IMG/VR virus record: IMGVR_UViG_3300035181_000471
Span: 62,001-126,000 of that record
DNA: 64,000 nt
Direction: 5' to 3' (one strand)
Part shown: piece after piece, positions 36 to 36,543 of the stretch
Numbering within the stretch: the stretch's first letter is position 1
Layout of the letters: the number at the start of each line of letters is the position of its first letter
The notes under the pieces: model-generated
The model's database searches: none
What the model was told of the DNA's origin: nothing
The model's input: only the letters and a program-made list of their open reading frames with translations
Made by a program: the position numbers and the translations under genes

Positions 36-110
36 TGGTGGAGCTACGGGGAGTCGAACCCCGAACTTTTGGATGCCGTCCAAATGTGTTCCCGCTAGCA
101 CTATAGCCCC
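36..110 (-). tRNA. tRNA-Ala(GGC)
   Basis: GGGGCTA/TAGCTCC acceptor with G3:U70, anticodon arm TTTGG-ACGGCAT-CCAAA, GTTCGACTC T-loop, encoded CCA. Confidence 0.93.
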
Positions 111-117
111 ATGATGC

Positions 118-191
118 TGGCTCCAAAAAGGGGAATCGAACCCCTGTCTCTGACTTAACAGGTCAGCATCCTACCATTGGATGATTTTGGA
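118..191 (-). tRNA. tRNA-Asn(GTT)
   Basis: Anticodon arm CTGAC-CTGTTAA-GTCAG, GTTCGATTC, G73, encoded CCA. Confidence 0.93.
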
Positions 192-270
192 ATAGTAAGG
201 TCTCTCCCTTGTCAAGCCTGGATGATTAGCGGCTTTCCCTCCGAGGTTGGGTTGGACAGTGAATCGTTTT

Positions 271-981
271 TTAGATTGCCTTCACTATCTCATTCGCCTG
301 ATTTTTACAAACCCAGGTGTCCAACTTTTTAAGGACTAATTGTCCATGATCAAATTCCCAATGACAGTTGGGGCAAAGACCAACCAGATTATCGGGGGCA
401 TTGATTTCTTTCAGTGTAGCGGAATCTGGGAAACTCATTACTGCTTGAATATGGCAGACCTCCACATGCTTACTATACCCACAATTAAAACAAGAATCGG
501 TCTTGTGGCAAACACTAGCTATTCTTTGAGCGTGTTTTGTTATAACAGACCTAGCTCTCTGCCAATTAGTGCCACCGGATTCAGATTTCCCAAATAACTC
601 TAACTTTGTTACATGGTCTCTTTTCCCTTTTAGGGGGTCTTTCTCTGCTTTAATCTTAACTACTTTTTCCTTTTTAGGTCTAAGTTTGTTATTGTAAGAG
701 GCCGCGCAAGAGGTGGAACAGAAAATCCCGCTTTTAGTCTGAGATGGGACTCTGTGAAACTGCTTGGAACAGTTAAAACAAGAGACCTCTAATCGAGTTA
801 TGTTATGATCGTGAAAGCATCGTTGGGAGCAGAATAATTTGATTTGCCCTCGTCTTTTCGATATAATTAAGTTGGCCTTAGATTGAGTGGTCTCTTTCCC
901 ACACTGCTCACAAACTACAGGAATGCGATCTTTGTATTTCTTGTCCTTATATTCGATCAGCAGCGTTTCTAGTTGAGTCAT
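271..981 (-). CDS. HNH homing-endonuclease-like protein with N-terminal CxxC...FCSxxC zinc-binding repeats, inserted in the tRNA array
   Basis: CFNCG...EVCHI...NLVGLCPNCHWEFD HNH signature; ATG at 981 preceded by GGAG (ORF track starts at TTG 1002); AT-rich. Confidence 0.85.
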   Translation of the reverse strand: MTQLETLLIEYKDKKYKDRIPVVCEQCGKETTQSKANLIISKRRGQIKLFCSQRCFHDHNITRLEVSCFNCSKQFHRVPSQTKSGIFCSTSCAASYNNKLRPKKEKVVKIKAEKDPLKGKRDHVTKLELFGKSESGGTNWQRARSVITKHAQRIASVCHKTDSCFNCGYSKHVEVCHIQAVMSFPDSATLKEINAPDNLVGLCPNCHWEFDHGQLVLKKLDTWVCKNQANEIVKAI

Positions 982-1020
982 AATTTCTCCCTCTATAATC
1001 AAGAGTTAGAAAGTCGATTT

Positions 1021-1095
1021 TGGTTGCGGGAGGTGGAATCGAACCACGCTTTCACTATGAGCTTATGAGACTCTAGGCCAACCTCTGGCCCCGCT
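1021..1095 (-). tRNA. tRNA-Met(CAT), initiator-like acceptor, atypical D-arm
   Basis: AGCGGGG/TCCCGCA-A-CCA with 1:72 mismatch, loop CTCATAA, GTTCGATTC; shortened D-arm. Confidence 0.75.
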
Positions 1096-1105
1096 ATAAT
1101 TTTAT

Positions 1106-1180
1106 TGGTCCTCCAGGCAGGAATTGAACCCGCACTTCATGGTTCGAAGCCATGTGTTCTATCCGTTATACTACTGGAAG
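1106..1180 (-). tRNA. tRNA-Arg(TCG)
   Basis: Anticodon arm CATGG-CTTCGAA-CCATG, GTTCAATTC, encoded CCA. Confidence 0.92.
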
Positions 1181-1308
1181 ATAATTTCTCGGCCTTGGGG
1201 TTGTGGCCCCTCGCTTGCGTCTGACTCCCTGCCATCAGTCAGAACCGTGTATAGAGCCGCTAAGTCTTCCTACCTACTCCATACGGAGAGGGGCTCTCTT
1301 GTGCGGCA

Positions 1309-1396
1309 TGGCGGAAGATACAGGAATCGAACCTGCTTGCCTTTGACAGCCCATGCTTTCCAGGCATGTGTGACGCTCCTACTTCACCGATCTTCC
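1309..1396 (-). tRNA. tRNA-Ser(GGA)
   Basis: CATGC-CTGGAAA-GCATG, long variable arm, G73, CCA. Confidence 0.93.
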
Positions 1397-1525
1397 ATTC
1401 TATACTAGATACTGAAAGTTTTTCAATATCGTTTGGTGGTAATTTTAGAATTATTTTTTGTAAACAACTCAGACCTTTGCTCTTATTATCGGGCGGTCCG
1501 GCGAGAACCAATCTTCGTCTTTATG

Positions 1526-1603
1526 TGGCGAGGCATAGGGGATTCGAACCCCTGATCTCTTCGTAGACAGCGAAGCGGGAACTCCGGACTTCCCCAATAC
1601 CCC
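1526..1603 (-). tRNA. tRNA-Asp(GTC)
   Basis: CTTCG-CTGTCTA-CGAAG, GTTCGAATC, G73, CCA. Confidence 0.92.
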
Positions 1604-1611
1604 ATGATAAT

Positions 1612-1686
1612 TGGTGCCAACAAAGGGATTCGAACCCTTGACAAGAAGCTTATGAGACTTCCCCCTCACCTTTCGGGCTTGCTGGC
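1612..1686 (-). tRNA. tRNA with CAT anticodon (elongator Met or lysidine-modified Ile2)
   Basis: GCCAGCA/TGTTGGC-A-CCA, GAAGT-CTCATAA-GCTTC, GTTCGAATC. Confidence 0.88.
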
Positions 1687-1745
1687 AAAGTGAGAGTTTT
1701 TAACTACCCAGTGGCTCTCACACTGGTCCTGGCCGTCCAAGTCAT

Positions 1746-1832
1746 TGGTACTCCTGACAGGATTCGAACCTGCGTTGGGCTTTCGCCGCACGGTTTCGTA
1801 GACCGTTACTAATCCATCTCAGTTACAGGAGC
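1746..1832 (-). tRNA. tRNA-Arg(ACG) with a long variable arm
   Basis: ACGGT-CTACGAA-ACCGT, extra arm GGC-GAAA-GCC, GTTCGAATC, CCA; 87 nt. Confidence 0.88.
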
Positions 1833-1840
1833 ATAGAATC

Positions 1841-1898
1841 AAGACTCGTCTTTTAGTTTCATCTTAAGTGAAAGGTTTTTAGTTGCTGTGAGAGTCTT
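1841..1898 (-). ncRNA. Candidate small RNA presenting an isolated anticodon-like stem-loop (CT-TAA-GA)
   Basis: Outer stem AAGACTC/GAGTCTT encloses TTTCA-CTTAAGA-TGAAA; lies between tRNA-Tyr CCA and tRNA-Arg 5' end. Confidence 0.45.
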
Positions 1899-1992
1899 TG
1901 GTGACGCATGTAGGAATCGAACCTACTCAGGGCTTACTTGTGTGCCAACGGTTTTACAGACCGCCTCCGCTCTCCTACTCGGACGATGCGCC
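1899..1992 (-). tRNA. tRNA-Tyr(GTA)
   Basis: GCGGT-CTGTAAA-ACCGT, long variable arm, A73, CCA. Confidence 0.93.
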
Positions 1993-2117
1993 ATAGACGA
2001 GGGTTTTTAGGTTCTCCCTCAAACCAATTCACCTGTCAACCCTAAAGTTGTAGATGGTTATCATGTTATTCATTATTTAGTTGTCAGAGAAGAAGAAACA
2101 AGCCTTGACTTGTTCTA

Positions 2118-2191
2118 TGGATGGGGTAGATGGATTTGAACCATCACCTTCGGAGTCAGAGACCGAAATCCTACCGTTAGAAGATACCCCA
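2118..2191 (-). tRNA. tRNA-Gln(CTG)
   Basis: TGGGGTA/TACCCCA acceptor (U1:A72), loop CTCTGAC, GTTCAAATC, CCA. Confidence 0.92.
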
Positions 2192-2542: not shown

Positions 2543-2974
2543 CTAAACTTTTTTGAAGGTTGCGATCTGACGAATGGCGGAACTGCTGATATGTCCTAGG
2601 TTACGGTCACAAATAAAATACACGGTGGGGACCGAGATTCCTAGATCTTCGTTCCAATACTGCTGGTTGGTCTCGTATTGAAGGTCGCTCCCATTGCGTA
2701 GCCCACGAATTACACCATCCACGGGCCAGCGTCCATCTTCGTTTAATTCGTTGATGAAGTTCACGAGCAAGCCCTTGAACCCTAACAGTATAACACGGTC
2801 TCCGTATCTTTCTTGAAAATATCTGGCAGAAGGATTGTGGATAGCTCCTTCTTTGGATGGATTCATGCCAACGGCCACCACAACTTTATCGTATACCCTC
2901 AAAGCTTTGTCTAGGATGTCAGTGTGACCATCGTGCCACGGATTGAACGAGCCTGGGTAGATTCCTGTTTTCAT
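2543..2974 (-). CDS. coaD: Phosphopantetheine adenylyltransferase (CoaD-like)
   Basis: IYPGSFNPWHDGH, VIRGLRNGSDLQYE, HISSSAIR motifs. Confidence 0.85.
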   Translation of the reverse strand: MKTGIYPGSFNPWHDGHTDILDKALRVYDKVVVAVGMNPSKEGAIHNPSARYFQERYGDRVILLGFKGLLVNFINELNEDGRWPVDGVIRGLRNGSDLQYETNQQYWNEDLGISVPTVYFICDRNLGHISSSAIRQIATFKKV

Positions 2975-3624
2975 TTGATCCTCGATAGGATCTCAGACTG
3001 ACGCCAAGCGTATTCATTGGTGGCAAACTTACTCTTAGCCCATTCAGTGAATAGATTGTGGGGGATGTGTTCAGATAGGAACACCATCTGGCCCTTAAGC
3101 ATTTCCTGTTCAGTGAAGGACTTTCCGCCGTTTAAGAATTCAAGTTGAAGACCGAGAATAATATGTTCAAACCACTCTGGCTCTAAAACCTGCATCAAGT
3201 CAGCATCACGAATGATCTTCTGCTCAATGGTCTTGGGTGTGTGGATAAACGGATACTGGGTCACTCTAATGGTGTGTTCAATCTGGAGATTATCTAACTC
3301 CACCGTACCATACCCAAAATCCTGGAATCCCTTGACGGCCACTTCAATGTTTTCAGCATCCGTAGACCTTCCGCCTGAATGATTGAAATCATGAAATAGT
3401 GCTGACACACCAATAAGATAGCACTGACGAAAATCCAGATTATAGTATTGAGCGCCTTCGATACAGTTACAAACCATGCAACAGGTGTGAAACCAGTTGT
3501 GGTAGGGAAGAGTATTAGAAAAATTGTTCAATCTTACCTTTTCAAACATAGTATTAAACCCGAAGTCCTTGGACAACTGTTCTGCCTGATCGTATCTTGG
3601 GGAAAAGTAGGTATCCTCAGCCAT
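2971..3624 (-). CDS. HD-superfamily metal-dependent phosphohydrolase (PDEase-like)
   Basis: PYHNWFH...ALFHDFNHSG...IIRDADL. Confidence 0.8.
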   Translation of the reverse strand: MAEDTYFSPRYDQAEQLSKDFGFNTMFEKVRLNNFSNTLPYHNWFHTCCMVCNCIEGAQYYNLDFRQCYLIGVSALFHDFNHSGGRSTDAENIEVAVKGFQDFGYGTVELDNLQIEHTIRVTQYPFIHTPKTIEQKIIRDADLMQVLEPEWFEHIILGLQLEFLNGGKSFTEQEMLKGQMVFLSEHIPHNLFTEWAKSKFATNEYAWRQSEILSRIK

Positions 3625-6907: not shown

Positions 6908-7603
6908 CTAGACTTCTTTGATTCGAACGATAAGACCATCCTTGTTGGTGATAAGGTAGAAATCATCGTATTCATAGCTAGTTTTGGGATAGAGGGGGTC
7001 ATGGATAGTCGTGGTGCTGAGGTGCGGTCCCAGATGAATCTGTGCATCCTTAATGGAGGTTTCTGACACAGTAATGAGATACATAGAAGGGAGCAACAAG
7101 ATTCTAGAGATCCCGGTTTTCGAGCCTCTCGTATAGAATTTCTCAATTTTAACTGGTTCCACGACTTTAGCACTGAGTTGCTTGGCTGGCTTATTAGCTA
7201 CAGTTGGGACGCGAGACTTAATCGGCAGAGTAGGAAGGATATAACCAGCCAAGCCGTGCTTAACTGCTCCAATTTCCTGCATCACCAGTCCGATATCTGC
7301 CCTACGGAGGGTCATACCGACACTGGTGGAGATATCGTTACAGAACATATGAAGCTGTCTGACATTACGGTTAAGGTAATAGCCGTTCCCGCTAGGAAGC
7401 GGAGAGAACTCTTCAATCACATTTTCCTTAATTTCTTTCAGGACAAGTCGAAAAAGAGCCTCAGTCTTCTTAGCGTCAGCTTGAATGGACTTGGCCTTTT
7501 CCAACTTGGCCTTAGCCTTTACTTCCTCAGCCTGCCACTTAGTAATTAGCTCCTGACAAACAATTGGAGTAGTCCGATTCTTAATACGAGTGCGGGTTCC
7601 CAT
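6908..7603 (-). CDS. Hypothetical protein
   Basis: 231-aa ORF, TAATG-coupled to upstream gene. Confidence 0.7.
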   Translation of the reverse strand: MGTRTRIKNRTTPIVCQELITKWQAEEVKAKAKLEKAKSIQADAKKTEALFRLVLKEIKENVIEEFSPLPSGNGYYLNRNVRQLHMFCNDISTSVGMTLRRADIGLVMQEIGAVKHGLAGYILPTLPIKSRVPTVANKPAKQLSAKVVEPVKIEKFYTRGSKTGISRILLLPSMYLITVSETSIKDAQIHLGPHLSTTTIHDPLYPKTSYEYDDFYLITNKDGLIVRIKEV

Positions 7604-8346
7604 TACCTGACTCCCAAAGTGGAGGTGGCTGTCTTGATGCGACCACGGTTATTCATATCCAGATTTCGACCAGTGGCCTGACCCTTGCTGTAAGCATCAC
7701 GGTCAATGTTACACTTAATAGAAGATGCAGAGCGAAGTTTACCAACGGTATCCTTGATGAAAGTATCAACCTGCTCACCCTGCTTTTCCAGCTTCATCAG
7801 AGCATACTGAGAACCACCCTTGAAGGCTTCTGCCTTAGTGGTGTTCAAGCGAGTGCGAATAGCGGTGGCGGCACCAAGATACCACGAATTTGCGTAAACC
7901 TTGCCCTGTCCAGAAGGAGCAAGGCGGGTAAGCTGGGTGATGGCGTAGGCCAGCAAGAAGCGAACATTGGCGATGTCGCTGGGACGGCCAAAGATCACGG
8001 TCTTTTTGCCACGCTGACCACCCATCTGGAAACCCTGACCACCGTAGTTAACTAGGCGGCAGTTATTGGCGGTAGCCAAAGCGCCTGCAAGAATGGCCTT
8101 CCAGCTAGCGATACGGCCAGCCAGGAAGAGAGGCTCGGCGTCCTGGATAATCGGCTCTTCGAAAGCCTTGGACTCCTCTTCGGAGAGTTCGGCCATCGTG
8201 AGCTTGTGCTTGTGAATGAGGGCTTGAGCCATAGACATGGCGGATTCGGCCTCGTGCTGGTTAGAGCTAGAAGCCGTTGCAAGAAGCTTGTTGATCCGCT
8301 CCTTGATGGTGGTCATATTAGGTGTAGCGGTAGTGGTCTCAGCCAT
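7603..8346 (-). CDS. DUF2786-family protein
   Basis: IKERINKLLATASSSNQHEAESAMSMAQALIHKH N-terminal motif; AYSKGQATG C-terminal motif. Confidence 0.8.
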   Translation of the reverse strand: MAETTTATPNMTTIKERINKLLATASSSNQHEAESAMSMAQALIHKHKLTMAELSEEESKAFEEPIIQDAEPLFLAGRIASWKAILAGALATANNCRLVNYGGQGFQMGGQRGKKTVIFGRPSDIANVRFLLAYAITQLTRLAPSGQGKVYANSWYLGAATAIRTRLNTTKAEAFKGGSQYALMKLEKQGEQVDTFIKDTVGKLRSASSIKCNIDRDAYSKGQATGRNLDMNNRGRIKTATSTLGVR

Positions 8347-8354
8347 GTGGTAGT

Positions 8355-8396
8355 GCCTCCAGAATGATTATACCACTCTGGAGGCTATTCCTTACC
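8355..8396 (-). promoter_or_regulatory. Promoter GGTA-N20-TATAAT with -10 in the loop of an RBS-pairing hairpin
   Basis: GCCTCCAGAGTG-GTATAAT-CATTCTGGAGGC. Confidence 0.7.
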
Positions 8397-8399
8397 AAA

Positions 8400-9539
8400 T
8401 TATTCCGAAATTTCTTCACGATCCTCAAGGGACAGCCACTCAAGAGTGGACTTAGGGCTGGCGTTCTTAAACCAATCCATTGCAGACTCTACACGACCAG
8501 AGCGAAGTGCAAACAAGACCCCGGAGTAGCGGTGCTTAAGAGCTTCAAACGCAAAGTCCTTCTGAGTCTCGATGTCCTTGATCTCACGGTAGGTTTTGTT
8601 GATGTTTTCAACCAACGAAGTGAGAGCGTTCTGGATTACAAGAATCTTATCCTGAACAAACTGAGGGAGAATGGACAGAACATCATCCACCTTCTCAGAA
8701 AGAATCAACTCAAGACGAGCCTTATTGGACTTACCCAGACCGTCACGCTGATGAGACATGAGACAGTATGCGTCACTTTTCAACTTGATACGGTTGAAGT
8801 TAGTATCAACGAGAACGAAGCCCTCAAACTCCAAAGGGTTACGGGTCTGAACATACTCTTTAAGAGCGTCCAGAGAGAAGCCGTCATACAATCTGACCAC
8901 AGGAGTAGGATGCTTAGGGTTCTCGTCCTTCCACACTTCCACATCGACTTCCTGAAGAGTATCAAGGTTGCGGATCGCTGTCAGAACCAACTTACGGTCC
9001 TTGTGGTGAACTACAACTTGATTTTCTGGCGAAAGTAACTCGTAGGCGTATGAAAAATTTGGCTCCATCGAGAAGATAAAGCGGGACCAAGATACCCCCA
9101 TGTCATGCAGGGCCTTGATAACCAAATCTCGATAAGACATACCTGAGTCATCAACCTCGTTAGATCCGTCAGGAATAGAGCGAGTCGAAACCTGCCAACC
9201 AAACTCTTCGTGGTACCATAGCGTGATCAAAGATCCATCCAGCTTCTCGTAGGTCTTGAAGTTCTCCCAATCGAAGCTAGAAGGGCAATGGCTCTCTCCG
9301 TAGTTGAAGAACTTGTTGAAGGCCCAACCCTTAACATCCCAAGTCGTAAGATCCAAGATGAGAGAGCGGCACTCCTGCACGATCTCCTCTCCCATAGGAG
9401 ACTCAATCATGGAGTAATTGAGGCAAGCCACATTCAGCTTCTCGTTTACGCGATAGCCGACATAGAACTCGGACTTGAGATCCTCAAGGGTCTTTCCAGA
9501 TCGAAGATATTCCTGAACCTTTAGCATAACTTCCTCCAA
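8400..9539 (-). CDS. RNA ligase, T4 Rnl1-like
   Basis: ECRSLI, FNKFFNYGE, YEKLDGSLI, YELLSPEN, EGFV, RIKLKS. Confidence 0.92.
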   Translation of the reverse strand: MEEVMLKVQEYLRSGKTLEDLKSEFYVGYRVNEKLNVACLNYSMIESPMGEEIVQECRSLILDLTTWDVKGWAFNKFFNYGESHCPSSFDWENFKTYEKLDGSLITLWYHEEFGWQVSTRSIPDGSNEVDDSGMSYRDLVIKALHDMGVSWSRFIFSMEPNFSYAYELLSPENQVVVHHKDRKLVLTAIRNLDTLQEVDVEVWKDENPKHPTPVVRLYDGFSLDALKEYVQTRNPLEFEGFVLVDTNFNRIKLKSDAYCLMSHQRDGLGKSNKARLELILSEKVDDVLSILPQFVQDKILVIQNALTSLVENINKTYREIKDIETQKDFAFEALKHRYSGVLFALRSGRVESAMDWFKNASPKSTLEWLSLEDREEISE

Positions 9540-9540
9540 T

Positions 9541-9873
9541 TTAGCTGTTTACGAGTGTAGAATACGGGATGTGCTGAACCTTGTAGACATGGTTCTTCAA
9601 GAGATTAACCATGTTCCTGGCCCCCACGATGTTCATAGAGTGGACCACAACCTGATAAGGCGGATTCTCAGAGATGGCCTTAGCCAACTCATAGCCATCG
9701 GGGTAATTAAGACCCAAATCATGGTCCAAAAACATAACATCCCACTTTTCAGCGATACGAACAAGAGCATCGGTACCGTCAGAGTAGTGAATGTCATGAC
9801 CCTGTTTAGACAACATGGCCTCAATCTTCACAAAGCGGGGATGTTCATCGTCAATGACGAGGATACGAGCCAT
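9541..9873 (-). CDS. Receiver-fold protein, cyclic-phosphate-processing receiver-like
   Basis: ILVIDD...FLDHDLG...GYE...VVHSMNIVGARNM; next to RNA ligase. Confidence 0.7.
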   Translation of the reverse strand: MARILVIDDEHPRFVKIEAMLSKQGHDIHYSDGTDALVRIAEKWDVMFLDHDLGLNYPDGYELAKAISENPPYQVVVHSMNIVGARNMVNLLKNHVYKVQHIPYSTLVNS

Positions 9874-9899
9874 GATTACCTCCAGTAGCCTATTATACC

Positions 9900-10046
9900 T
9901 TATTTTGTGGAGTTCTTTTCCAGAATTTCTTTGGCTTCCTCAATTAGTTTGGGGTTAGAGAGTAATTCTAGGAGGCATTTGGACTTATGGATGGTTCCCA
10001 GATAGTCGCTGGTGAGGAGGTGCTTAAGAATGTCTTTCACTTCCAT
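9900..10046 (-). CDS. Small hypothetical protein (48 aa)
   Basis: MEVKDILKHLL...NSTK, GGAGG RBS and TAATG coupling; not in ORF track. Confidence 0.55.
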   Translation of the reverse strand: MEVKDILKHLLTSDYLGTIHKSKCLLELLSNPKLIEEAKEILEKNSTK

Positions 10047-11308
10047 TAGGCCACCTCCTCAATGAGTTCCAGTTTGCAGCGGGTCAGGATGGTCTGGGGG
10101 ACATCCTTGTAGTTGTCCAGCTTCTTGATCTTGCCAGTGATACGAACCTTGCTGAACTTGTGCAGATCGTTGTAGTTGCAGTTCACGAAGTCAAAAGAGC
10201 TAGTGAACCAAGTGGCAACACCCTTTGCACCCTGGACTTTGATCAGATAGGAAACACCAAACTCAGTGCTGAAGGTGGTAGTGAAAGCAATCTCGCCCTC
10301 CAGCGTGACCTTCTCGCCAATCTCACCCAGATACATGAAGGAGCAGATGGGGAGTTCCTGGGTCTCAGTGGGGGCCTTGTCCTTGCCCTCAGCTTCGAAG
10401 CCGACACCGATGAGGGTCAGGTACTTCTGAGCAGCGATAGCAGCCATAGCGGGGGAGCAAGTGCTGTCCACGATGGAGGAGCGCAGGTTGGAGGAGAAGA
10501 GGTCAGTCACAGCGTAACCATTCAGAAAGTAATCCTGAAGGGCAGAGAACTGCTTGTTGATCATTTCCCGATTTTCAGAGAAGAAAGTGTGAAGGGTGGG
10601 GGTTTTCTTAGTGTAGCCAGGAGTGTTAGGAGCCAGGTAATAGCTGGTGAGTTCCAAAGCCTCGTTAGCAGTGGAGTTATCAAACTTACTGCCAACGAAA
10701 CCACGACTCTGAACAGAAGCGAGAGCGGTGAGGATGAAGTAGTTAGCCCACAACATCTCAGCGGCACGGTGATCACGGTAACCACGCTCTTCCTCGCAGA
10801 AGTTGGTGAAGCAGGTCATGGCCTTCAGGAAGTTCTCGATACCGATACCATACCACTCCTTAGCGCAAGTGGCACCGATGGTGACAAGCTTCTCGTCTTT
10901 CTTGAAGATGTAGAGAGCGTTACGGCGGCGATTGGTGTTGCAATGATCGCAGTTGCTCTTGCGGTCCTTGATCATGTTGAACAGGATTTCATCGTATGTG
11001 TCAGAGGTTTCGTCAGCCTTGAAAATACGGTTGCCAGCTTCGTCAGAACCGAAGTCCAGACGAGCGATGAAAGTGGTGCCGTCCACGCCAACGCGATCAA
11101 TGGGAATGATCAGATCGAGCTTGTGGACCAGGACACGGCGATTGCGCTCATTGCCGTTTTCGTCAACCTGCGTGTAGGTGACATATTCTTCGGTGTGATT
11201 GGTCTGTTCGACCTCAGCATACCCGAATTTCACGAGCTTCTTGTTGATTTTGGCACAACGCTCGTTGAAGTGAGTCATCGAGGTGGTTTCAATCTTCACG
11301 ATAGCCAT
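10046..11308 (-). CDS. Phage protein with CDHC..RRR...C zinc motif and C-terminal OB-fold-like domain
   Basis: CDHCNTNRRR, IGATC, GEIGEKV...GKIKK...QTILTR; own promoter and GGAGG. Confidence 0.75.
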   Translation of the reverse strand: MAIVKIETTSMTHFNERCAKINKKLVKFGYAEVEQTNHTEEYVTYTQVDENGNERNRRVLVHKLDLIIPIDRVGVDGTTFIARLDFGSDEAGNRIFKADETSDTYDEILFNMIKDRKSNCDHCNTNRRRNALYIFKKDEKLVTIGATCAKEWYGIGIENFLKAMTCFTNFCEEERGYRDHRAAEMLWANYFILTALASVQSRGFVGSKFDNSTANEALELTSYYLAPNTPGYTKKTPTLHTFFSENREMINKQFSALQDYFLNGYAVTDLFSSNLRSSIVDSTCSPAMAAIAAQKYLTLIGVGFEAEGKDKAPTETQELPICSFMYLGEIGEKVTLEGEIAFTTTFSTEFGVSYLIKVQGAKGVATWFTSSFDFVNCNYNDLHKFSKVRITGKIKKLDNYKDVPQTILTRCKLELIEEVA

Positions 11309-11312
11309 AGGT

Positions 11313-11359
11313 TACTGCCTCCACAAGTATTATACCAGGGGAGGCGGTAGATTTCTACC
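11313..11359 (-). promoter_or_regulatory. Promoter GGTA-N21-TATAAT within RBS-pairing inverted repeat
   Basis: TACCGCCTCC...GGTATAAT...GGAGGCAGTA. Confidence 0.65.
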
Positions 11360-11365
11360 AAAATT

Positions 11366-11644
11366 TTAGGTTTTAGTAACTTCTTTTAATGCACACTTTG
11401 AGCAGCGGCGAACCTTGATGTCACACGGCTTGGGATCTCCAATTTCCACCCCTTGGAAGGTGGGGGTAGTAGTTCCAACTTCGTAGGTGTAGGGAAGCCA
11501 AGTGTGCTGGGTTTCATCACGGATAACCTGATGTAACACTCTCCCACAGTTGCAGACATGCCAAACTTCGTGAACCTGACAGTTGTCAACCTCTTTGAGA
11601 AGGTGGTAGACATGGCGATGAAAAAGGCGATCAAAAATGGTCAT
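11366..11644 (-). CDS. Small Cys/His-rich hypothetical protein
   Basis: 92 aa, CNCG and CSKC motifs. Confidence 0.65.
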   Translation of the reverse strand: MTIFDRLFHRHVYHLLKEVDNCQVHEVWHVCNCGRVLHQVIRDETQHTWLPYTYEVGTTTPTFQGVEIGDPKPCDIKVRRCSKCALKEVTKT

Positions 11645-11929
11645 TTAGTCTCCATAGCGACTCAGAAACGAGTCTGTGATGCTGTCTTCCTTCTTTTCAC
11701 GCTTAAGCTTCTTCAGTTCCACATACTTAGCGGGGAACGGAGGGCTGGAAGGGATGAGGTCTTCGGGCTCACCAAGGGCAAACAAGGCTCGGCGCAAGGC
11801 TCCAATTTCATTTCGGTAAAGCATGGCGAGTTCACCATTGTCCCACTCGGTTTCCAGCTTCACAGTGGCCTTATTGAGATAACAAAGGCGCTTCTGGATG
11901 GTAATTCGGGCGATCTTTTCAGGCATCAT
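11645..11929 (-). CDS. Hypothetical protein
   Basis: 94-aa ORF with GAGGA RBS. Confidence 0.65.
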   Translation of the reverse strand: MMPEKIARITIQKRLCYLNKATVKLETEWDNGELAMLYRNEIGALRRALFALGEPEDLIPSSPPFPAKYVELKKLKREKKEDSITDSFLSRYGD

Positions 11930-11943
11930 GGCATTTCCTCTGG

Positions 11944-12276
11944 TTAAACAAGGCGATCAGGGAAGCAGTTGTCATAAGCTTTACGAACCGTATCAGCCAG
12001 GACATCCACATACACTTCAACGGCTTCGTATTTGTAGTTACGGACTGAGGCGTTCTTACCACGGCCCATCTTGTATGAATTCACTTCGTAGATGTCCTTG
12101 CCAGCGTCCAGAAGGATCTCAACATAAATCCCCTTGGTGCAGACATAGGTAAGACCGTCCATACCCTTGTGGGTCATGGCAATGGACTTTTTGGCACCAA
12201 TGTAGGCACGGCACCAGTAATCGAGAGCGTTGATCTGACGGTTGATCTCGGTTGCTACTTCCAAGGTGTTGGACAT
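11944..12276 (-). CDS. Hypothetical protein
   Basis: ATG 12276 with GGAGG; downstream of promoter. Confidence 0.75.
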   Translation of the reverse strand: MSNTLEVATEINRQINALDYWCRAYIGAKKSIAMTHKGMDGLTYVCTKGIYVEILLDAGKDIYEVNSYKMGRGKNASVRNYKYEAVEVYVDVLADTVRKAYDNCFPDRLV

Positions 12277-12322
12277 TTGTCCCTCCACAGCTATTATACC
12301 GAAGGAGGGACAAATTTCTACC
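12275..12322 (-). promoter_or_regulatory. Promoter GGTA-N20-TATAAT within perfect 12-bp RBS/start-pairing hairpin
   Basis: ATTTGTCCCTCC...GGTATAAT...GGAGGGACAAAT(G). Confidence 0.72.
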
Positions 12323-12323
12323 G

Positions 12324-12725
12324 TTAGAGCTTCATTTCTTCAGTCGTTCCATTTTCACTAAAATAACGAACTTTACGAACCCCGGCCAACTTCATCAAAT
12401 GCTGACAGTTAGCGCACGGCTTAGAGGATGCGGGTCTACCATCCCCCCCGGTGCGCCAGACATACATAATGAGATTGGTATCACCGTCATAGTGTCTACG
12501 GCGAATAAGGGCCATCTGTTCGGCATGGACACAGACATTATACCCGGATTTGTGCTGACTTTGAGGGTGGCTCTTAGTCATTAGATTGAACCCGATGGAG
12601 AGAAGGTTACTACCACTGAACATTGCGGCCCCCATCTTCCAGGGGCTATAAGTCACCTCGGCATGAGCGGAGGCAGCTTCAGCGGCTTCAAATCCCTTTA
12701 CCCACCTTTTTCCTCTTCCGTTCAT
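12324..12725 (-). CDS. Zinc-dependent deaminase (cytidine/dCMP deaminase superfamily)
   Basis: HAE...SKPCANC motifs. Confidence 0.85.
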   Translation of the reverse strand: MNGRGKRWVKGFEAAEAASAHAEVTYSPWKMGAAMFSGSNLLSIGFNLMTKSHPQSQHKSGYNVCVHAEQMALIRRRHYDGDTNLIMYVWRTGGDGRPASSKPCANCQHLMKLAGVRKVRYFSENGTTEEMKL

Positions 12726-13459: not shown

Positions 13460-13556
13460 GGCTTCCTCCGAATGGTTTTCAATGACTGGGGCAACAAGCG
13501 TGATCAAAGTTCTCGGACACTATGTCCTCCTTATTTGATTATACCGGGATAAAAGC

Positions 13557-13585
13557 AAAAACCCCCCAAATTTCTTTAGGGGGTT
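13557..13585 (-). terminator. Intrinsic terminator
   Basis: AACCCCC-TAAAGAAATTT-GGGGGGTTTTT. Confidence 0.65.
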
Positions 13586-13821
13586 CACTGTGAAGGGCAA
13601 ATTGGGAGGGAGGAGGCAATGTCTTGCCCTTCATTTTACTACTTCTTTTATTTCTTGTACTTTGACTCTATAATAGTTAGGTCAGGGTCGTGGTCAATGA
13701 GATTGAAATACTGCTCATCGGCCTGCTTGATCCATTCTTTTCGCTTTTCTTGGTCTCTAGGACTTACACCCTGGATTTCTTCTAAGTGATTCATGTTCTT
13801 ACTCCTTACCTAATACTGGGA

Positions 13822-22729: not shown

Positions 22730-23378
22730 TAATGGCTCGGAAACAGTAGGAACTGCATGAGTAATTGTCTAGGGTCTTGTTGTCGGCTATTTCAACATCA
22801 TCAGGGGTCATGAATTCTTTCAGGGTGTATGCTGCTTGGTTACAGGCGTTCCTGATGGTTTCATCATTCAATCTCTTGGTCATTTGAAGGATGGACTGGA
22901 ATTCCGAAATATGCATCAGGGCTAACTGATGAGGGATGCTACCTTCTGCGGCACATTTCTTAAATAGAGCAATAGCTTCGGTCAATCGAATGTTGGGAGA
23001 ATCTAGGTGAATCTCAATACAACAGAGTTTGAACCAAAGCTTTAGAATATTAGAGAGTTCTTCCCATCTCGGAAAGCCGGTATTGTGGTTACGGTCATCC
23101 AAAACCCCATCAAGCATACCAGTCTGCTCCAAATAGTCCCTATCGTCATCAATCGTTGGCTTTGCAACAAAGGCATGGCGGCGAAGCATCTTCTCTTTGC
23201 GAACTAACCCGCTTGAACACTTGCATGGGCCAGCATTTCCAATGGCGGCTAGATCAAGTTGATGGTATGCCAACTTTTTCAGGGTTTTTCCATCGAATTT
23301 CTGGCCTTTTGCCTTCAACTTCTCTAGTAATGAATAGAAATCCTCATACGACTCCACTGTTCGTCCTCCTAGCCTCAC
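22719..23378 (-). CDS. Hypothetical protein
   Basis: 219-aa ORF; start uncertain. Confidence 0.65.
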   Translation of the reverse strand: MRLGGRTVESYEDFYSLLEKLKAKGQKFDGKTLKKLAYHQLDLAAIGNAGPCKCSSGLVRKEKMLRRHAFVAKPTIDDDRDYLEQTGMLDGVLDDRNHNTGFPRWEELSNILKLWFKLCCIEIHLDSPNIRLTEAIALFKKCAAEGSIPHQLALMHISEFQSILQMTKRLNDETIRNACNQAAYTLKEFMTPDDVEIADNKTLDNYSCSSYCFRAINEH

Positions 23379-23393
23379 CTTATTATACTGGTT

Positions 23394-26300
23394 TTAAGAG
23401 GAAGCTAGGGCAGATTTCTTTCCAGAGTAGACAGGGTAGGCCACAATAATTGGAATAGTGCGAGTTATGGTGGGATCGGCAACGGAGGTTGCGGTGATGT
23501 AGGCTGGGTCACCCAATGGGTGGGCCACCGATGGTGCAGTCCAGTAGATGAAGTTATCTGGGGAGTTGGAGGTGGAAACAGAGAGGTTCCCAACACTACA
23601 GGTCCAACTTACAGAGGTATCTACGCAGTAAGTAGCTGTTGCGCTAATCTTTGTGACAGAATTGACTAGAACAATGGCGGTGTTTGATGCGGCAACACCT
23701 GGAACGGTTGGGCCGTTAAGAATAACGGTTGGGACGGTTACAGTGACATCCACAGAGGTATGATCACCTGCGGCGTTAGTCACAGTCAGGGTGAAGACAT
23801 TAGATTTAGCAGTCAAAGGCCCGGTATCGTAGCCTTGACCACTTCTTATGATGCTGGGGTTTCCAGGGAGTGTTGGAGTGATTGTTGCAGTTCCAGAGGC
23901 AAAAACAGGGGTTAGAACGGCAAATCCACCGTAATTGGGGGAGGTGGCGGAGAACGAGGAGATCTCTCCGGCCCCCACTACGGTAATAACACAATCAGCG
24001 TATTTAGTTGGATCAATGACTGAAGTTGCTCTCAGAACACTGGTCCCGACTGTAGAAGCGTTGTAGGTATTTCCGTTTGAAACAGACCCTACCCCGGATG
24101 CGATAGACCAAGTTACAGAGGTATTAACTGCTCCGGTCACAGTGGCAGGCGTTGTGAAGGTAGTTCCAATCGTCAAGACCTTAGTCGCTAGAACAGTCAC
24201 TACAACGGGAGTCATCGTTACAGTAGCGGAGGCAGACTTGGAGGGATCAGCAACAGAGGTTGCGGTGACAGTCAGCGTATTTCCAGGAACCGAAGTTAGA
24301 GGTGCTGTGAACTGGCCCGAGGCGTTAATTGTGCCATAGGTAGTAGACCAGATGACCGAAGTGTCTACGGCTCCGGTTACAGAGGATGCGAAGGTAGCCG
24401 ACTCTCCTGCTAGTAGGGTCTTCGTTGTAGGTAGGACTGAAACAGAAACAGTCTGAGGAGTTACCGTTAGACTTCGTTGGGTGCTTCCAGAAATGGCATT
24501 TGTAGCGGTGAGAGTGAAAGTAACTGCGGTTAGGGTGGCGGTTCTAGGTGCAGTTGGGGTCCCAGAGGTCACGGCTCCAACACCCTGATTGACAGATCCA
24601 GTTCCTCCAGAGAAGGTGGCGGTTAGGGTGTAGGTTTGGCCGACCTGAGGAGAGACTACGGAACTAGTGAACCCTGAAATTACAGGAAGATTGACCACTG
24701 TGACAGCGGAGGTTCCTGACTTGGCGGGGTTAGCTGTGGATGTGGCCCTAACAGTTGCAATTCCACCCGAGGGTGAGGTAGCTGGGGCAGTATACACACC
24801 ACTAGAGTTAACGGTTCCATAGGTTGCTCCACCATCTACTGACCAAGTGACTCCCTGTAGCCCTACGACTGCACCAGAAACGGTTGGAGTGAGGGTGGTG
24901 GTGCCGTTGATGGCAACAGAGGTAGAGGTTGGTGCTACAGAGACAGTGATGGCACTAACCGTCATGGTGATAGTAGCAGATTTGGTTGCGTCAGCTACGG
25001 ATGTTGCTCTGACTACGGTTCCTGTTCCGGTTCCAGCGGTGTATACACCACCTACGGTGATAGAACCATTAACAGCCGAAGCTCCTCCATCAATGGACCA
25101 AGTTACAGCGGTGTTTACTGCGTTGGTGACGGTTGCTGAGCAGTTAGTTGTCTCTCCGGCAAGAAGAGTGGTTTTTACTGCGGAAGCAGAGATGGTGACG
25201 GTTGGAATGGTGATTACACAAGTGGCGTTCTTTGTAGGATCAGACACGGATGCGGCATAGATGGTGTAAGTTCCTGGTACGGCTGGTGCTACGAAAACAG
25301 CGGTGGTGGCACTAGGCGTTAGACCACTCCCTACAGTGGCTACAGACCAAGTTACGGTGTTGTCTGTAGCCCCTGTTACCGTTGCGGTTAAATTGACGGT
25401 TCCGCCAACTTGAGGTGAGGCGGTAGTTGGGGACACGGCCACTGACACGGTTTGAGGAGTGATGGTAACGGATGGAGCATCATAAACAACCCCAGCTAAG
25501 CTGGTAACCCTCAAATAGTAGGTGATGGGAGAAGTAAATCCGCCAGTCTGAACAGCGATGCTAACACCAGTTGCGGCATTAGCAGAAATGTCGCTCCCAC
25601 CTAAGGTAGTTCCAATAATCGCAGAAGAACCGTTGTGAGTTGGAGTGATGGTTACATTGGTAGCACCTCTTAGCGGAGCTAGGGTTGAAGCGGCTAGAGA
25701 TCCAGTTGGAGATGCGGCTGTGACAACAGTTAGATCACCAGTTCCGCTATTGGAGCTATTTTTAGCGGCGTTGGCAACAGAGGTGGCACGGATTGTGGCG
25801 GTTCCGGTTGAAGTGGGAGTGAATTGGTTTCCAACCCAACTTCCAGTTACGCCTGTGTGGGACCAAGTTACGGTGGTATCCACGGCTCCAGTCACGGTTG
25901 CACTGTAGGACTTAGTGGTATTGACTCCAATGGCCCCAGCAGGAGTAGGAGTCCCTACAACTACAAGCTGAGGGGTGATAGTTACAGATGCAGTCGTAGA
26001 GGCACCGACTACATTAGTCACTGTTAGAGTGTAAGTGATGGGCGCAGACCCAGATTGAACAGGGTTTGTAGGTAGAGTTGGAGTGGCCTTGTCAACACCA
26101 GAAGAGATTGCACCAATTCCGTTATCGACAGTTGCAGTTCCACCACCAGGAGCGGTGTATACGCCGTTCAAGTTTACTGAAGCACCATGCAAGGGAGTTA
26201 AGGAGGAGGAGGTGAAGCTAGAAATGGTGGGTGGTGCCCAAGCCGTTACGGTCACAGTTCTAGTTACAGAAGTTCCTGCGGCATTTGTGGCCGTTAAAGT

Positions 26301-30829: not shown

Positions 30830-31342
30830 TTAAGAAGTTGTTTCACAAAGAACATGAAACTTCTCCATCAGGTTCCAGCGGAAACTTCGAACAGGCTGGA
30901 TCAGAGGCATTCCTGCCTCGTCAGGAGTTCTGTCGGCCTTCTTCTGGTTACACTTGAAGCAACACGCAACCAAGTTACCAGGGTTGCTACCACCTCCACG
31001 GCTACGAGGGATAACATGGTCAATTGTAGTAGCCTTAGGGCCATCGGGACCGCAATATTGGCAGATGTGCTTGTCACGCTCCAGGATTCCACGGAAACCT
31101 CGACCAACAGTGATCTTCGACTCCTTCACAGCCTGGGCGTGAGGATAGATGATCACCTTGAAGTCTGAGAAGGTGTCCATTTCGGACCATGCAGATCGAG
31201 ACCAGCTAGGTAGGTTTAGAACCTCTGCTCTTTCTGTAACTAGAGCCTTAACTGCGTGTCTACGAGTAACGGTCATCATGGGAATGAAATTCCGGTCCAC
31301 GGCGATGATCTGCTCTCCCATATTTTTCTTCCGCTTGTCCAT
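30830..31342 (-). CDS. HNH endonuclease (McrA-like)
   Basis: ILERDKHICQYCG...TIDHVIPRSRGG...NLVACCFKCNQKK; ATG 31342 with GAGG. Confidence 0.92.
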   Translation of the reverse strand: MDKRKKNMGEQIIAVDRNFIPMMTVTRRHAVKALVTERAEVLNLPSWSRSAWSEMDTFSDFKVIIYPHAQAVKESKITVGRGFRGILERDKHICQYCGPDGPKATTIDHVIPRSRGGGSNPGNLVACCFKCNQKKADRTPDEAGMPLIQPVRSFRWNLMEKFHVLCETTS

Positions 31343-31345
31343 AGA

Positions 31346-31433
31346 GTTACCTCGTTCTCTTTTAAAGGAGAACTCCAAAGTCGATCTTTGGAGCCTCTAT
31401 CTATTATACCAAGGCTCCAAAGATTTTCTTACC
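31346..31433 (-). promoter_or_regulatory. Promoter GGTA-N21-TATAAT in a 13-bp inverted repeat, followed by alternative hairpins over the HNH RBS
   Basis: ATCTTTGGAGCCT/AGGCTCCAAAGAT at 31412-31424 and 31384-31396. Confidence 0.65.
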
Positions 31434-34968: not shown

Positions 34969-34999
34969 TGTGCCTCCACACCATTATACCTGACTGTTC

Positions 35000-36494: not shown

Positions 36495-36513
36495 GTGTAT
36501 TGCCTCCATAGTC

Positions 36514-36543
36514 ATTATACCAGGGTGGCCCCAGAATCCTACC
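36514..36543 (-). promoter_or_regulatory. Promoter GGTA-N20-TATAAT
   Basis: GGTAGGATTCTGGGGCCACCCTGGTATAAT. Confidence 0.65.

What the first reader, a model, noticed from the sequence alone, without database searches (positions are those of the whole stretch)
8355..12322. Recurrent hairpins that place the -10 box in the loop and pair the promoter spacer with the downstream RBS
Seen (minus strand): 8385-8355 GCCTCCAGAGTG-GTATAAT-CATTCTGGAGGC (12 bp, one GU); 11349-11313 TACCGCCTCC...GGAGGCAGTA (9 of 10); 12315-12275 ATTTGTCCCTCC...GGAGGGACAAAT (perfect 12 bp, covers GGAGG and AT of ATG); weaker cases at 9880-9912 and 36502-36529. The stems differ in sequence, so pairing is what is retained. 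Established: T4 uses such hairpins at a few genes (e, soc, I-TevI) so that only transcripts from the internal promoter are translated. Inference: here it is used systematically, silencing these genes on long read-through transcripts and giving promoter-specific translation; cruciform-dependent promoter control is an alternative.
Basis: partly seen in the sequence, partly recalled or inferred. Interest (0 to 1): 0.68.

Follow-up and report, generated by a model that had tools for sequence, protein, structure and literature searches.

The report
Promoter hairpins that hide ribosome sites
In an uncultured jumbo phage, a few compact promoter cassettes are built as hairpins with the -10 box in the loop, so that long read-through transcripts probably hide the ribosome binding site; this is a real and selected feature, but it follows a design already known from phage T4 and is used at a minority of promoters.

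Summary
The three main hairpins are in the sequence exactly as described. The window is part of a 221-kb metagenomic jumbo-phage record.

Against shuffled controls, three of the ten leftward TATAAT promoters in the window have very strong pairing across the -10 box. These are 8355-8385, 12275-12315 and a new one at 31384-31424, with z about -4.5. Two more are marginal (11313-11349 and 23368-23409).

Pairing is under selection:
- A 91%-identical relative carries a compensatory U-A to C-G change in the 12275-12315 stem.
- The 6-bp anti-SD:SD core at the DUF2786 gene is kept in relatives with about 35-40% protein identity.

Use is not systematic, because most cassettes show no excess pairing. The strongest new hairpin brackets the -10 box but not the ribosome site of its gene, an HNH endonuclease.

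The best reading is a T4 gene e / soc / I-TevI-type device sitting inside PeSL-like shuffling promoter cassettes. It would silence translation on read-through RNA. No RNA data exist, so transcript starts are predicted, not mapped. I rate it a new member of a known kind, of moderate interest.

The parts
8355..8385 (-). Hairpin 1, upstream of the DUF2786 gene. The 5' arm is 8385-8374 in the promoter spacer, the -10 TATAAT is 8372-8367 in the loop, and the 3' arm is 8366-8355 and contains SD GGAGG at 8360-8356.
   Evidence: -25.5 kcal/mol, z -4.1, 0 of 200 shuffles; z -4.7. In relatives L084 and L085 the arms are intact while the -10 changes.
7603..8346 (-). Gene served by hairpin 1: a 247-aa DUF2786/DUF7168 protein, with ATG at 8346.
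11313..11349 (-). Hairpin 2 (marginal), upstream of the 420-aa gene. The 5' arm is 11349-11340, the -10 is 11334-11329, and the 3' arm is 11322-11313 with the SD. The ATG is at 11308.
   Evidence: z -1.9; only a 6-bp core in the MFE; P 0.05. It is absent at the orthologous promoter of L070/L079, L071 and L078, and present as 8 bp with two G-U in L072.
12275..12315 (-). Hairpin 3, upstream of a 110-aa gene of unknown function. The 5' arm is 12315-12304, the -10 is 12298-12293, and the 3' arm is 12286-12275, covering the SD and the first two letters of the ATG at 12276. The whole 47-nt intergenic space 12277-12323 is this one cassette.
   Evidence: (-26.5 kcal/mol, z -5.6). A compensatory U-A to C-G change is seen in L083.
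31384..31424 (-). Hairpin 4 (new): a perfect 13-bp stem. The 5' arm is 31424-31412 in the spacer, the -10 is 31408-31403, and the 3' arm is 31396-31384. The 3' arm is not the SD of the downstream HNH gene (SD about 31353, ATG 31342). It can instead pair with 31380-31372 in a transcript started at this promoter.
   Evidence: z -4.4.
23368..23409 (-). Hairpin 5 (marginal): 9 bp with one G-U, arms at 23409-23401 and 23376-23368, TATAAT at 23387-23382 in a 24-nt loop. The 3' arm abuts the SD of the gene that starts at 23357.
   Evidence: P 0.06. It has no good -35-like element, so the promoter call is weaker.
9880..9912 (-). Cassette promoter (TATAAT 9897-9892) upstream of the cREC receiver gene. 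Only 5 bp of cross pairing, at chance level.
   Evidence: P 0.59.
36502..36529 (-). Cassette promoter (TATAAT 36519-36514). Cross pairing is at chance level.
   Evidence: P 0.39.
13537..13586 (-). Intrinsic terminator (13586-13559) followed by promoter GGTATAAT (13545-13538). This is the likely start of the long leftward unit whose read-through would cross hairpins 3, 2 and 1. No other strong terminator lies on this strand down to 7000.

Best explanation
The leftward (non-structural) half of this jumbo phage uses compact promoter-plus-RBS cassettes. Each has a -35-like TAGAAA/TAAGAA element, a 16-18 nt spacer, (G/A)GTATAAT, 6 nt, GGAGG, 5-9 nt and a start codon.

In a minority of cassettes the spacer carries an anti-SD stretch (CCTCC or CCTTC plus gene-specific flanks) that is complementary to the SD region. 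RNA that reads through from an upstream promoter contains both arms, so it folds into a -24 to -26 kcal/mol hairpin that buries the SD (and in one case the AUG), and the gene is not translated from it. RNA started at the cassette's own promoter begins about 6-8 nt after the -10 box. That point is at or inside the 3' arm, so this RNA lacks the 5' arm and is translated.

The effect is to tie translation of that module to its own promoter. This is insulation from read-through. It would become a delay if the cassette promoters need a phage factor. Untranslated read-through RNA may in addition be cut short by Rho.

What is shown: the hairpins, their excess over chance, selection on pairing, the absence of terminators upstream, and the differential folds. 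What is inferred: the transcript start, the existence of read-through RNA, and the translational effect.
For: - Stems are far beyond shuffled controls at 8372, 12298 and 31408.
- TATAAT in loops of perfect stems occurs 5 times against 0.25 expected.
- Among predicted gene starts, SD-containing upstream helices are longer at cassette genes than at other genes: mean 7.3 vs 3.9 bp, Mann-Whitney P 0.001.
- Hairpin 3 has a compensatory U-A to C-G change in a 91% relative.
- In hairpin 1, the arms are unchanged and the stem is lengthened by one pair in 94% relatives, even though the -10 itself changed to TATACT.
- The 6-bp anti-SD:SD core of hairpin 1 is kept (with C-G to U-G) in L071 and L072, whose proteins are only about 35-40% identical. 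The rest of the spacer is not kept, and the distance from the core to the -10 varies from 4 to 8 nt.
- Other cassettes in relatives also pair beyond chance: L071 14100 P 0.003 and L072 9978 P 0.007. Fisher's combined test without the two best sites gives P 0.006.
- Long RNAs fold with the SD paired, and short RNAs with the SD free.
- There is no strong intrinsic terminator between promoter 13543 and position 7000 on this strand.
- The mechanism is established for T4 e, soc, 49, I-TevI and mobE (PMC3014915, PMC2988022). Promoter-encoded CT-rich insulators are established in sigma-54 promoters (bioRxiv 10.1101/086108).
Against: - No RNA run holds this phage, so no transcript start, read-through RNA or translation effect has been observed.
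- Hairpin 4 (31384-31424) brackets the -10 but not the SD. Because the SD sits only 6 nt after the -10 in short-leader cassettes, SD inclusion could be a by-product of any selection for a hairpin around the -10.
- Loop promoters and upstream promoters look like one class, so the T4 temporal logic is not evident.
- Strong stems are not conserved at orthologous promoters of more distant relatives.
- Most cassettes have none.
- The sense versus antisense energy comparison does not tell RNA from DNA pairing (P 0.75).
Confidence: 0.5

Rival explanations
1. PeSL-type element. The stem-loop is an attenuator, transcription insulator or 3'-end stabiliser for the upstream unit, and the repeated cassette mainly serves as a recombination site for shuffling gene modules. 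Overlap with the SD is incidental to the tight -10 to SD spacing.
For: - PeSLs of T4-type phages are sigma-70-like promoters with a stem-loop that often overlaps the -10 box, and they end in an SD and a start codon. One such stem-loop cut reporter expression like a strong terminator (PMC2839356; PMC4122927).
- Here the cassettes sit at module boundaries that differ between close relatives. An R2K gene is inserted at the site of hairpin 3 in the P0002 contig.
- L086 is 99.3% identical up to 9559. It then replaces the RNA ligase, hairpin 1 and DUF2786 with another cassette plus a DUF2786 paralogue.
- The order of the RNA ligase and DUF2786 genes differs in L071 and L072, while each gene keeps its own promoter.
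- Hairpin 4 does not touch an SD.
Against: - No U-tract follows the 3' arm on the sense strand at any of the sites.
- The phage has canonical terminators elsewhere.
- The conserved part of hairpin 1 across distant relatives is exactly the anti-SD:SD core.
- Recombination needs sequence similarity, not intramolecular pairing, so it does not explain the compensatory change.
Confidence: 0.22
2. DNA-level control. The inverted repeat extrudes as a cruciform under negative supercoiling, or forms a hairpin in single-stranded DNA. This presents or hides the -10 box, so the promoter senses topology. The selected feature is '-10 in the loop', not RBS pairing.
For: - The one feature shared by all three strongest hairpins, including the one that does not touch an SD, is that they bracket the -10 box.
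- The stems are nearly perfect Watson-Crick inverted repeats, equally stable on both strands.
Against: - Loops of 7-24 nt are unfavourable for cruciform extrusion.
- Wobble pairs occur in hairpin 1 and in the conserved cores of relatives; these would be A-C mismatches on the other strand.
- No known sigma-70-type promoter works this way.
- N4 virion-polymerase hairpin promoters have 5-7 bp stems and 3-nt loops, which these sites do not.
Confidence: 0.07
3. No function. The stems arose by chance or by templated (quasi-palindrome) mutation, seeded by a C-rich spacer facing the GGAGG box.
For: - Strong stems are confined to this lineage and absent from about 60 kb of homologous DNA of more distant relatives.
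- Set-level statistics are modest (P 0.048).
- Most cassettes have none.
Against: - Three stems of 12-13 bp occur at promoters, where simulated genomes have 0-3 such stems anywhere.
- A compensatory change is present.
- The anti-SD core is conserved across distant relatives in an otherwise unconserved spacer.
Confidence: 0.1

Closest known systems
T4-type RBS-sequestering hairpins with an internal promoter (genes e, soc, 49, I-TevI/II/III, segB; mobE of Aeh1)
   Same: A stable helix buries the SD and/or AUG on long upstream-initiated RNAs. A promoter placed in the DNA that encodes the 5' part of the structure gives RNAs that lack the 5' arm and are translated (PMC3014915, PMC2988022). One of the sites here also precedes a free-standing HNH endonuclease gene.
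   Different: In T4 the internal promoter is a late one (TATAAATA, gp55), so the device delays expression. Here it is a TATAAT promoter of the same class as the upstream ones. The HNH-gene hairpin does not cover the RBS; it resembles the seg43(25) hairpin of Aeromonas phage 25, which also lies upstream of a free RBS (PMC2988022). The phage shows no recognisable kinship to T4: there is no nucleotide match in cultured phages, and a Gp23 profile search was blank, though its controls were also blank.
PeSLs (promoter-early stem-loops) of T4-type phages
   Same: These are compact intergenic cassettes: an upstream stop codon, an A/T-rich stretch, a sigma-70-like -35 and -10, a stem-loop often between or overlapping the boxes, and then an SD and start codon. 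They are repeated many times among small genes and lie at the borders of indels and replacements between close relatives (PMC2839356, PMC4122927). All of this holds here.
   Different: PeSL stems are family-wide motifs (G-run/C-run and similar), read as terminators and not reported to pair with the SD. Here each stem has its own letters around a shared CCTCC/GGAGG core, encloses the -10, and has no U-tract. Only a minority of cassettes carry one.
Promoter-encoded CT-rich insulators in sigma-54 promoters (Levy et al., bioRxiv 10.1101/086108)
   Same: A short CT-rich anti-SD motif inside the promoter, within about 25 nt upstream of the SD, silences translation of the downstream gene on read-through transcripts.
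   Different: Those are 3-5 nt motifs in bacterial sigma-54 promoters, shown with synthetic libraries. Here the stems are 6-13 bp, in sigma-70-type phage promoters, and untested.

Membership tests
T4-type promoter-embedded RBS-occluding hairpin | A stable helix includes the SD and/or start codon of the regulated gene. | tested here: met
   Hairpins 1 and 3 meet it, and hairpin 2 meets it with a 6-bp core. Hairpin 4 does not.
T4-type promoter-embedded RBS-occluding hairpin | Transcripts from the internal promoter start downstream of the 5' arm. | not testable with these tools
   This is predicted from the -10 in the loop and the -35-like box 16-18 nt upstream. No RNA run holds the phage.
T4-type promoter-embedded RBS-occluding hairpin | Upstream-initiated transcripts read through the site. 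| tested here: inconclusive
   No strong intrinsic terminator lies between promoter 13543 and position 7000 on the minus strand. The RNA itself was not observed.
T4-type promoter-embedded RBS-occluding hairpin | The internal promoter belongs to a later temporal class than the upstream promoters. | tested here: not met
   Loop promoters and upstream promoters share the (G/A)GTATAAT box. Only the presence of the -35-like box differs.
PeSL cassette | An intergenic cassette made of a sigma-70-like promoter, a stem-loop, an SD and a start codon. | tested here: met
   The 47-nt intergenic space 12277-12323 is exactly one such cassette.
PeSL cassette | Repeated among variable small genes and located at indel or replacement borders between close relatives. 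| tested here: met
   (L086, L084 and the P0002 contig). Gene order is shuffled in L071 and L072.
PeSL cassette | The stem-loop terminates or attenuates upstream transcription. | not testable with these tools
   No U-tract follows the sense-strand stems. No RNA data exist.
Intrinsic terminator | A GC-rich stem followed directly by a U-run on the transcribed strand. | tested here: not met
   None of hairpins 1-5 is reported by the terminator scan on the minus strand, and by eye no T-run follows them. The two other TATAAT-in-loop stems in the genome (47944 and 215869) do meet it on the opposite strand.
N4-type hairpin promoter | A 5-7 bp stem with a 3-nt loop of conserved sequence, recognised by a virion RNA polymerase. 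| tested here: not met
   Stems here are 9-13 bp with loops of 7-24 nt that contain a sigma-70-type -10. The feature definition is from my own knowledge.
Known RNA family (Rfam) | A match to a curated covariance model. | tested here: not met
   Only tRNAs reach the gathering score in the window.

The most novel reading that the evidence does not exclude
The selected feature is '-10 box in the loop', not RBS occlusion. Hairpins bracket the -10 even where the RBS is 45 nt away (31384-31424), so the stems might act on the promoter itself. One possibility is a supercoil-driven cruciform that exposes or hides the -10. Another is nascent read-through RNA that shields the promoter from occlusion. Either would make these cassettes self-insulating, topology-sensing promoters of a jumbo-phage clade.
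Probability: 0.1. Interest if true: 0.75.

Novelty: new member of a known kind. Interest (0 to 1): 0.42.

Why it matters
The result extends the T4 'translate only from my own promoter' device. That device is so far documented for late genes and homing endonucleases of T-even phages. Here it appears with sigma-70-type cassette promoters in an unrelated, uncultured jumbo-phage lineage from mats, sediments and lakes.

Together with the fixed -10 to SD spacing and the module shuffling seen between relatives, this suggests gene modules that carry their own promoter, RBS and read-through insulator. Such a design would let modules move between genomic contexts without changing their expression, and it is a natural counterpart of synthetic insulators.

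The sites are short, well defined and directly testable with reporters.

Tried and rejected
- Nucleotide search of cultured phages found no match.
- A pattern search for the cassette in IMG/VR gave 68 single hits, all apparently chance.
- Single-protein locus searches in IMG/VR returned only the same phage.
- Profile searches added only the 37% and 57% groups.
- DNA of the 90% relative (the P0002 contig) could not be fetched.
- No RNA runs exist. Laying contigs of four DNA runs on 8200-12500 (4301 letters, within the operators' limit) showed identical strains plus a 91% relative. Its differences at the hairpins were not listed, so I recovered that relative through cluster members instead.
- The sense versus antisense energy test, meant to tell RNA from DNA pairing, showed no difference.
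- The genome hairpin at 215869-215910 first looked like a fourth RBS-type case. It is a plus-strand terminator after a 34-aa ORF, with no minus-strand gene downstream.
- An operator for a dimeric repressor is rejected because the arms differ between sites.
- RNase III sites are rejected as too short, and T7-like or N4-like promoters as not matching.
- No late-promoter consensus was evident by eye in the rightward structural block.
- The Gp23 profile search was blank, but so were its controls, so it says nothing.
Full report
**What the window is.** The window is bases 62001-126000 of a 221-kb IMG/VR virus record rated 77% complete. It has 47% G+C and no nucleotide match among cultured phages. 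Protein matches to known phages are only distant.

Runs that hold the sequence come from microbial mat, sediment and aquatic metagenomes, and none is RNA. A crude gene call shows a leftward block of small, nucleotide-metabolism and replication genes from 1 to about 108.8 kb. A rightward block of large structural genes follows from about 109 to 215 kb. The finding lies in the leftward block.

**The promoter cassette.**
- GGTATAAT occurs 12 times in the window against 1.3 expected, and 10 of these are on the minus strand.
- Genome-wide listing of TATAAT and of its downstream context shows a recurrent compact cassette in intergenic spaces.
- The cassette is a -35-like TAGAAA/TAAGAA box, a 16-18 nt spacer, (G/A)GTATAAT, usually exactly 6 nt, GGAGG, 5-9 nt and the start codon.
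- The consensus scan independently pairs TAGAAA with TATAAT at 16-17 nt for two of the sites.
- Two cassettes directly follow canonical terminators (13543 and 37115), where a new transcript must begin.
- The same cassette, with the same 6-nt spacing between -10 and SD, is used in related phages L070, L071 and L072-L076.

I therefore accept these as promoters. Their transcripts are predicted to start at or next to the SD. That start is an inference.

I measured the best duplex between the 30 nt upstream and the 30 nt downstream of each -10 box, against 1000 shuffles of the upstream arm.

| -10 site (window) | Duplex energy (kcal/mol) | Against shuffles |
|---|---|---|
| 8372 | -25.7 | z -4.7 |
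| 12298 | -25.0 | z -4.3 |
| 11334 | -18.3 | P 0.05 |
| 23387 | -19.4 | P 0.06 |
| 13543, 34988, 37115 | -7.0 to -8.9 | P 0.49-0.86 |

- Whole-region folds agree: z -4.1 for site 8372, -5.6 for 12298, -1.9 for 11334 and -3.1 for 31408.
- For 15 short-leader cassettes of the genome, swapping downstream partners gives a mean only slightly weaker than the true pairs (P 0.048). The signal therefore sits in a few sites.
- An unbiased search finds 50 perfect stems of 9 bp or more in 221 kb; first-order simulated genomes give 19-30.
- Eleven of these stems are 12 bp or longer, against 0-3 in the simulations.
- Five of the 50 have TATAAT in the loop against 0.25 expected.
- Of the five, three are the promoter hairpins above. 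The other two (genome 47944 and 215869) are terminators of genes on the other strand.
- Among predicted gene starts, SD-containing upstream helices are longer at cassette genes than elsewhere (mean 7.3 vs 3.9 bp, P 0.001).

**Evidence for selection on pairing.** Cluster members of the window's proteins led to close relatives whose DNA could be fetched.
- L083 is 91% identical over 826 nt and keeps the cassette of hairpin 3 without gaps. It has two changes in the arms, and they are the two partners of one pair, turning U-A into C-G. By my estimate, two substitutions placed at random in 24 arm positions would do this about 3% of the time. The tool's shuffle control has no power with three rows.
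- L084 and L085 are 94% identical and keep both arms of hairpin 1 unchanged. Their -10 box became TATACT, and a flanking change adds a thirteenth pair.
- The orthologous DUF2786 promoters of L071 and L072 come from phages whose proteins are only about 35-40% identical. They keep the six core pairs between a GCCT(C/T)C stretch in the spacer and the GGAGGC of the RBS, with one C-G to U-G change. The rest of the spacer is unrelated.
- The distance of that stretch from the -10 varies from 4 to 8 nt among cassettes. This fits pairing better than a fixed protein contact.
- Two other cassettes in relatives pair beyond chance: the RNA ligase gene of L071 (P 0.003) and the 420-aa gene of L072 (P 0.007). 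Combining all cassettes without the two best gives P 0.006.

**Limits of the pattern.**
- Strong stems are not conserved. The promoter of the 420-aa gene has no stem in L070/L079, L071 or L078.
- About 60 kb of non-redundant homologous DNA from more distant relatives has no perfect promoter-loop stem of 8 bp or more.
- Most cassettes have no excess pairing, so the device is recurrent but not systematic.
- Hairpin 4 lies between an AAA ATPase gene and a free-standing HNH endonuclease gene. Its 5' arm is again in the spacer and its 3' arm starts at the predicted transcript start. The RBS of the HNH gene lies about 30 nt beyond the 3' arm and is not differentially paired.
- In a transcript started at the hairpin-4 promoter, the 3' arm can pair with a third copy of the motif just downstream, giving a 5'-terminal hairpin.
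- In short-leader cassettes the SD sits 6 nt after the -10. Any hairpin around the -10 would therefore include it, which keeps promoter-centred readings alive.

**How it most likely works.** Long RNAs containing both arms fold so that the SD is buried, and in hairpin 3 the AUG as well. RNAs starting just after the -10 have a free SD. No strong terminator separates promoter 13543 from hairpins 3, 2 and 1, so read-through RNA is expected. This is the design proven for T4 gene e, where translation drops about 100-fold, and for soc, 49, I-TevI and mobE (PMC3014915, PMC2988022).

The difference from T4 is that the loop promoter is not of a visibly later class. The likely role is therefore insulation: each module is translated only from its own promoter. 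This matches the CT-rich insulators found in sigma-54 promoters (bioRxiv 10.1101/086108). A delay is possible if the box-bearing promoters need a phage factor, while the two terminator-proximal promoters lacking the box do not. That is speculation.

**Relation to PeSLs.** The cassette as a whole matches the PeSLs of T4-type phages: an upstream stop codon, an A/T-rich stretch, a sigma-70-like promoter, a stem-loop often overlapping the -10, and an SD and start. PeSLs are repeated among variable genes and sit at recombination borders (PMC2839356, PMC4122927). Here too the cassettes mark module borders:
- An R2K gene is inserted at the place of hairpin 3 in one relative.
- L086 is 99.3% identical up to 9559 and then carries a different cassette with a DUF2786 paralogue, in place of the RNA ligase, hairpin 1 and DUF2786.
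- The order of the RNA ligase and DUF2786 genes differs in L071 and L072, while each keeps its promoter.

PeSL stems are read as terminators. The stems here lack a U-tract on the sense strand, whereas the phage has canonical terminators elsewhere.

**What could not be settled.** RNA-level and DNA-level pairing cannot be separated, because sense and antisense duplex energies do not differ. Transcript starts, read-through RNA and any translational effect are unobserved. No known RNA family matches.

**Verdict.** Its claim of systematic use is not supported, and the HNH-gene hairpin does not fit it. The principle is known, so this is a new member of a known kind, of moderate interest.

Noticed in passing
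window 13591-13633 (minus strand); L071 8804-8840; L072 6257-6293: A hairpin lies just upstream of the terminator at 13559-13586, with a loop rich in CCTCC-like letters. The same element sits at the same place in two distant relatives with different stem letters (covarying stems, similar loop). It may be an anti-SD-bearing 3'-UTR element or a small RNA.
   Followed up: partly
window 10013-10061 (minus strand): A perfect 10-bp stem pairs the SD of a 48-aa ORF with a CCTCC stretch inside that ORF. The ORF's ATG at 10046 overlaps the stop of the 420-aa gene. This is an SD-sequestering hairpin of the opposite polarity, with no promoter in the loop.
   Followed up: no
window-wide cassettes, e.g. 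8355-8372, 12281-12298, 34978-34988, 36508-36519; also L070-L074: The distance from TATAAT to GGAGG is fixed at 6 nt (range 4-8) in most cassettes of this phage and its relatives. The mRNAs are therefore predicted to begin with the SD itself.
   Followed up: partly
G000:C1:215869-215910 (outside the window): A 12-bp perfect stem has a promoter-like TATAAT in its loop on the minus strand and a T-run after it on the plus strand, just after a 34-aa very basic ORF. It is probably a plus-strand terminator, and possibly also an antisense promoter. There is no minus-strand gene downstream.
   Followed up: partly
G000:C1 about 3403-3445 (outside the window): A 13-bp helix (with G-U pairs) buries the SD of the gene at 2843-3400, with no TATAAT in the loop.
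   Followed up: no
window 37617-38885 and 30830-31342: The dUTPase gene carries a LAGLIDADG endonuclease domain in its first half (intein-like), and a free-standing HNH endonuclease gene follows the AAA ATPase gene. A helicase of relative L071 also carries intein-type domains.
   Followed up: no
window 9559 and leftwards; L086 8316-9340: A 99.3%-identical strain diverges abruptly at the end of the cREC gene. It lacks the RNA ligase gene and carries a different promoter cassette and a DUF2786 paralogue. L084 and L085 replace the 231-aa gene at 6908-7603 with a 78-aa ORF.
   Followed up: partly
window 12537-12544 (minus strand): A GGTATAAT lies inside the dCMP deaminase reading frame (12324-12725). 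It could be an internal promoter or chance.
   Followed up: no
window 36-2191 (minus strand): A cluster of eight tRNA genes: Ala, Asn, Arg (two), Ser, Asp, Tyr and Gln.
   Followed up: no
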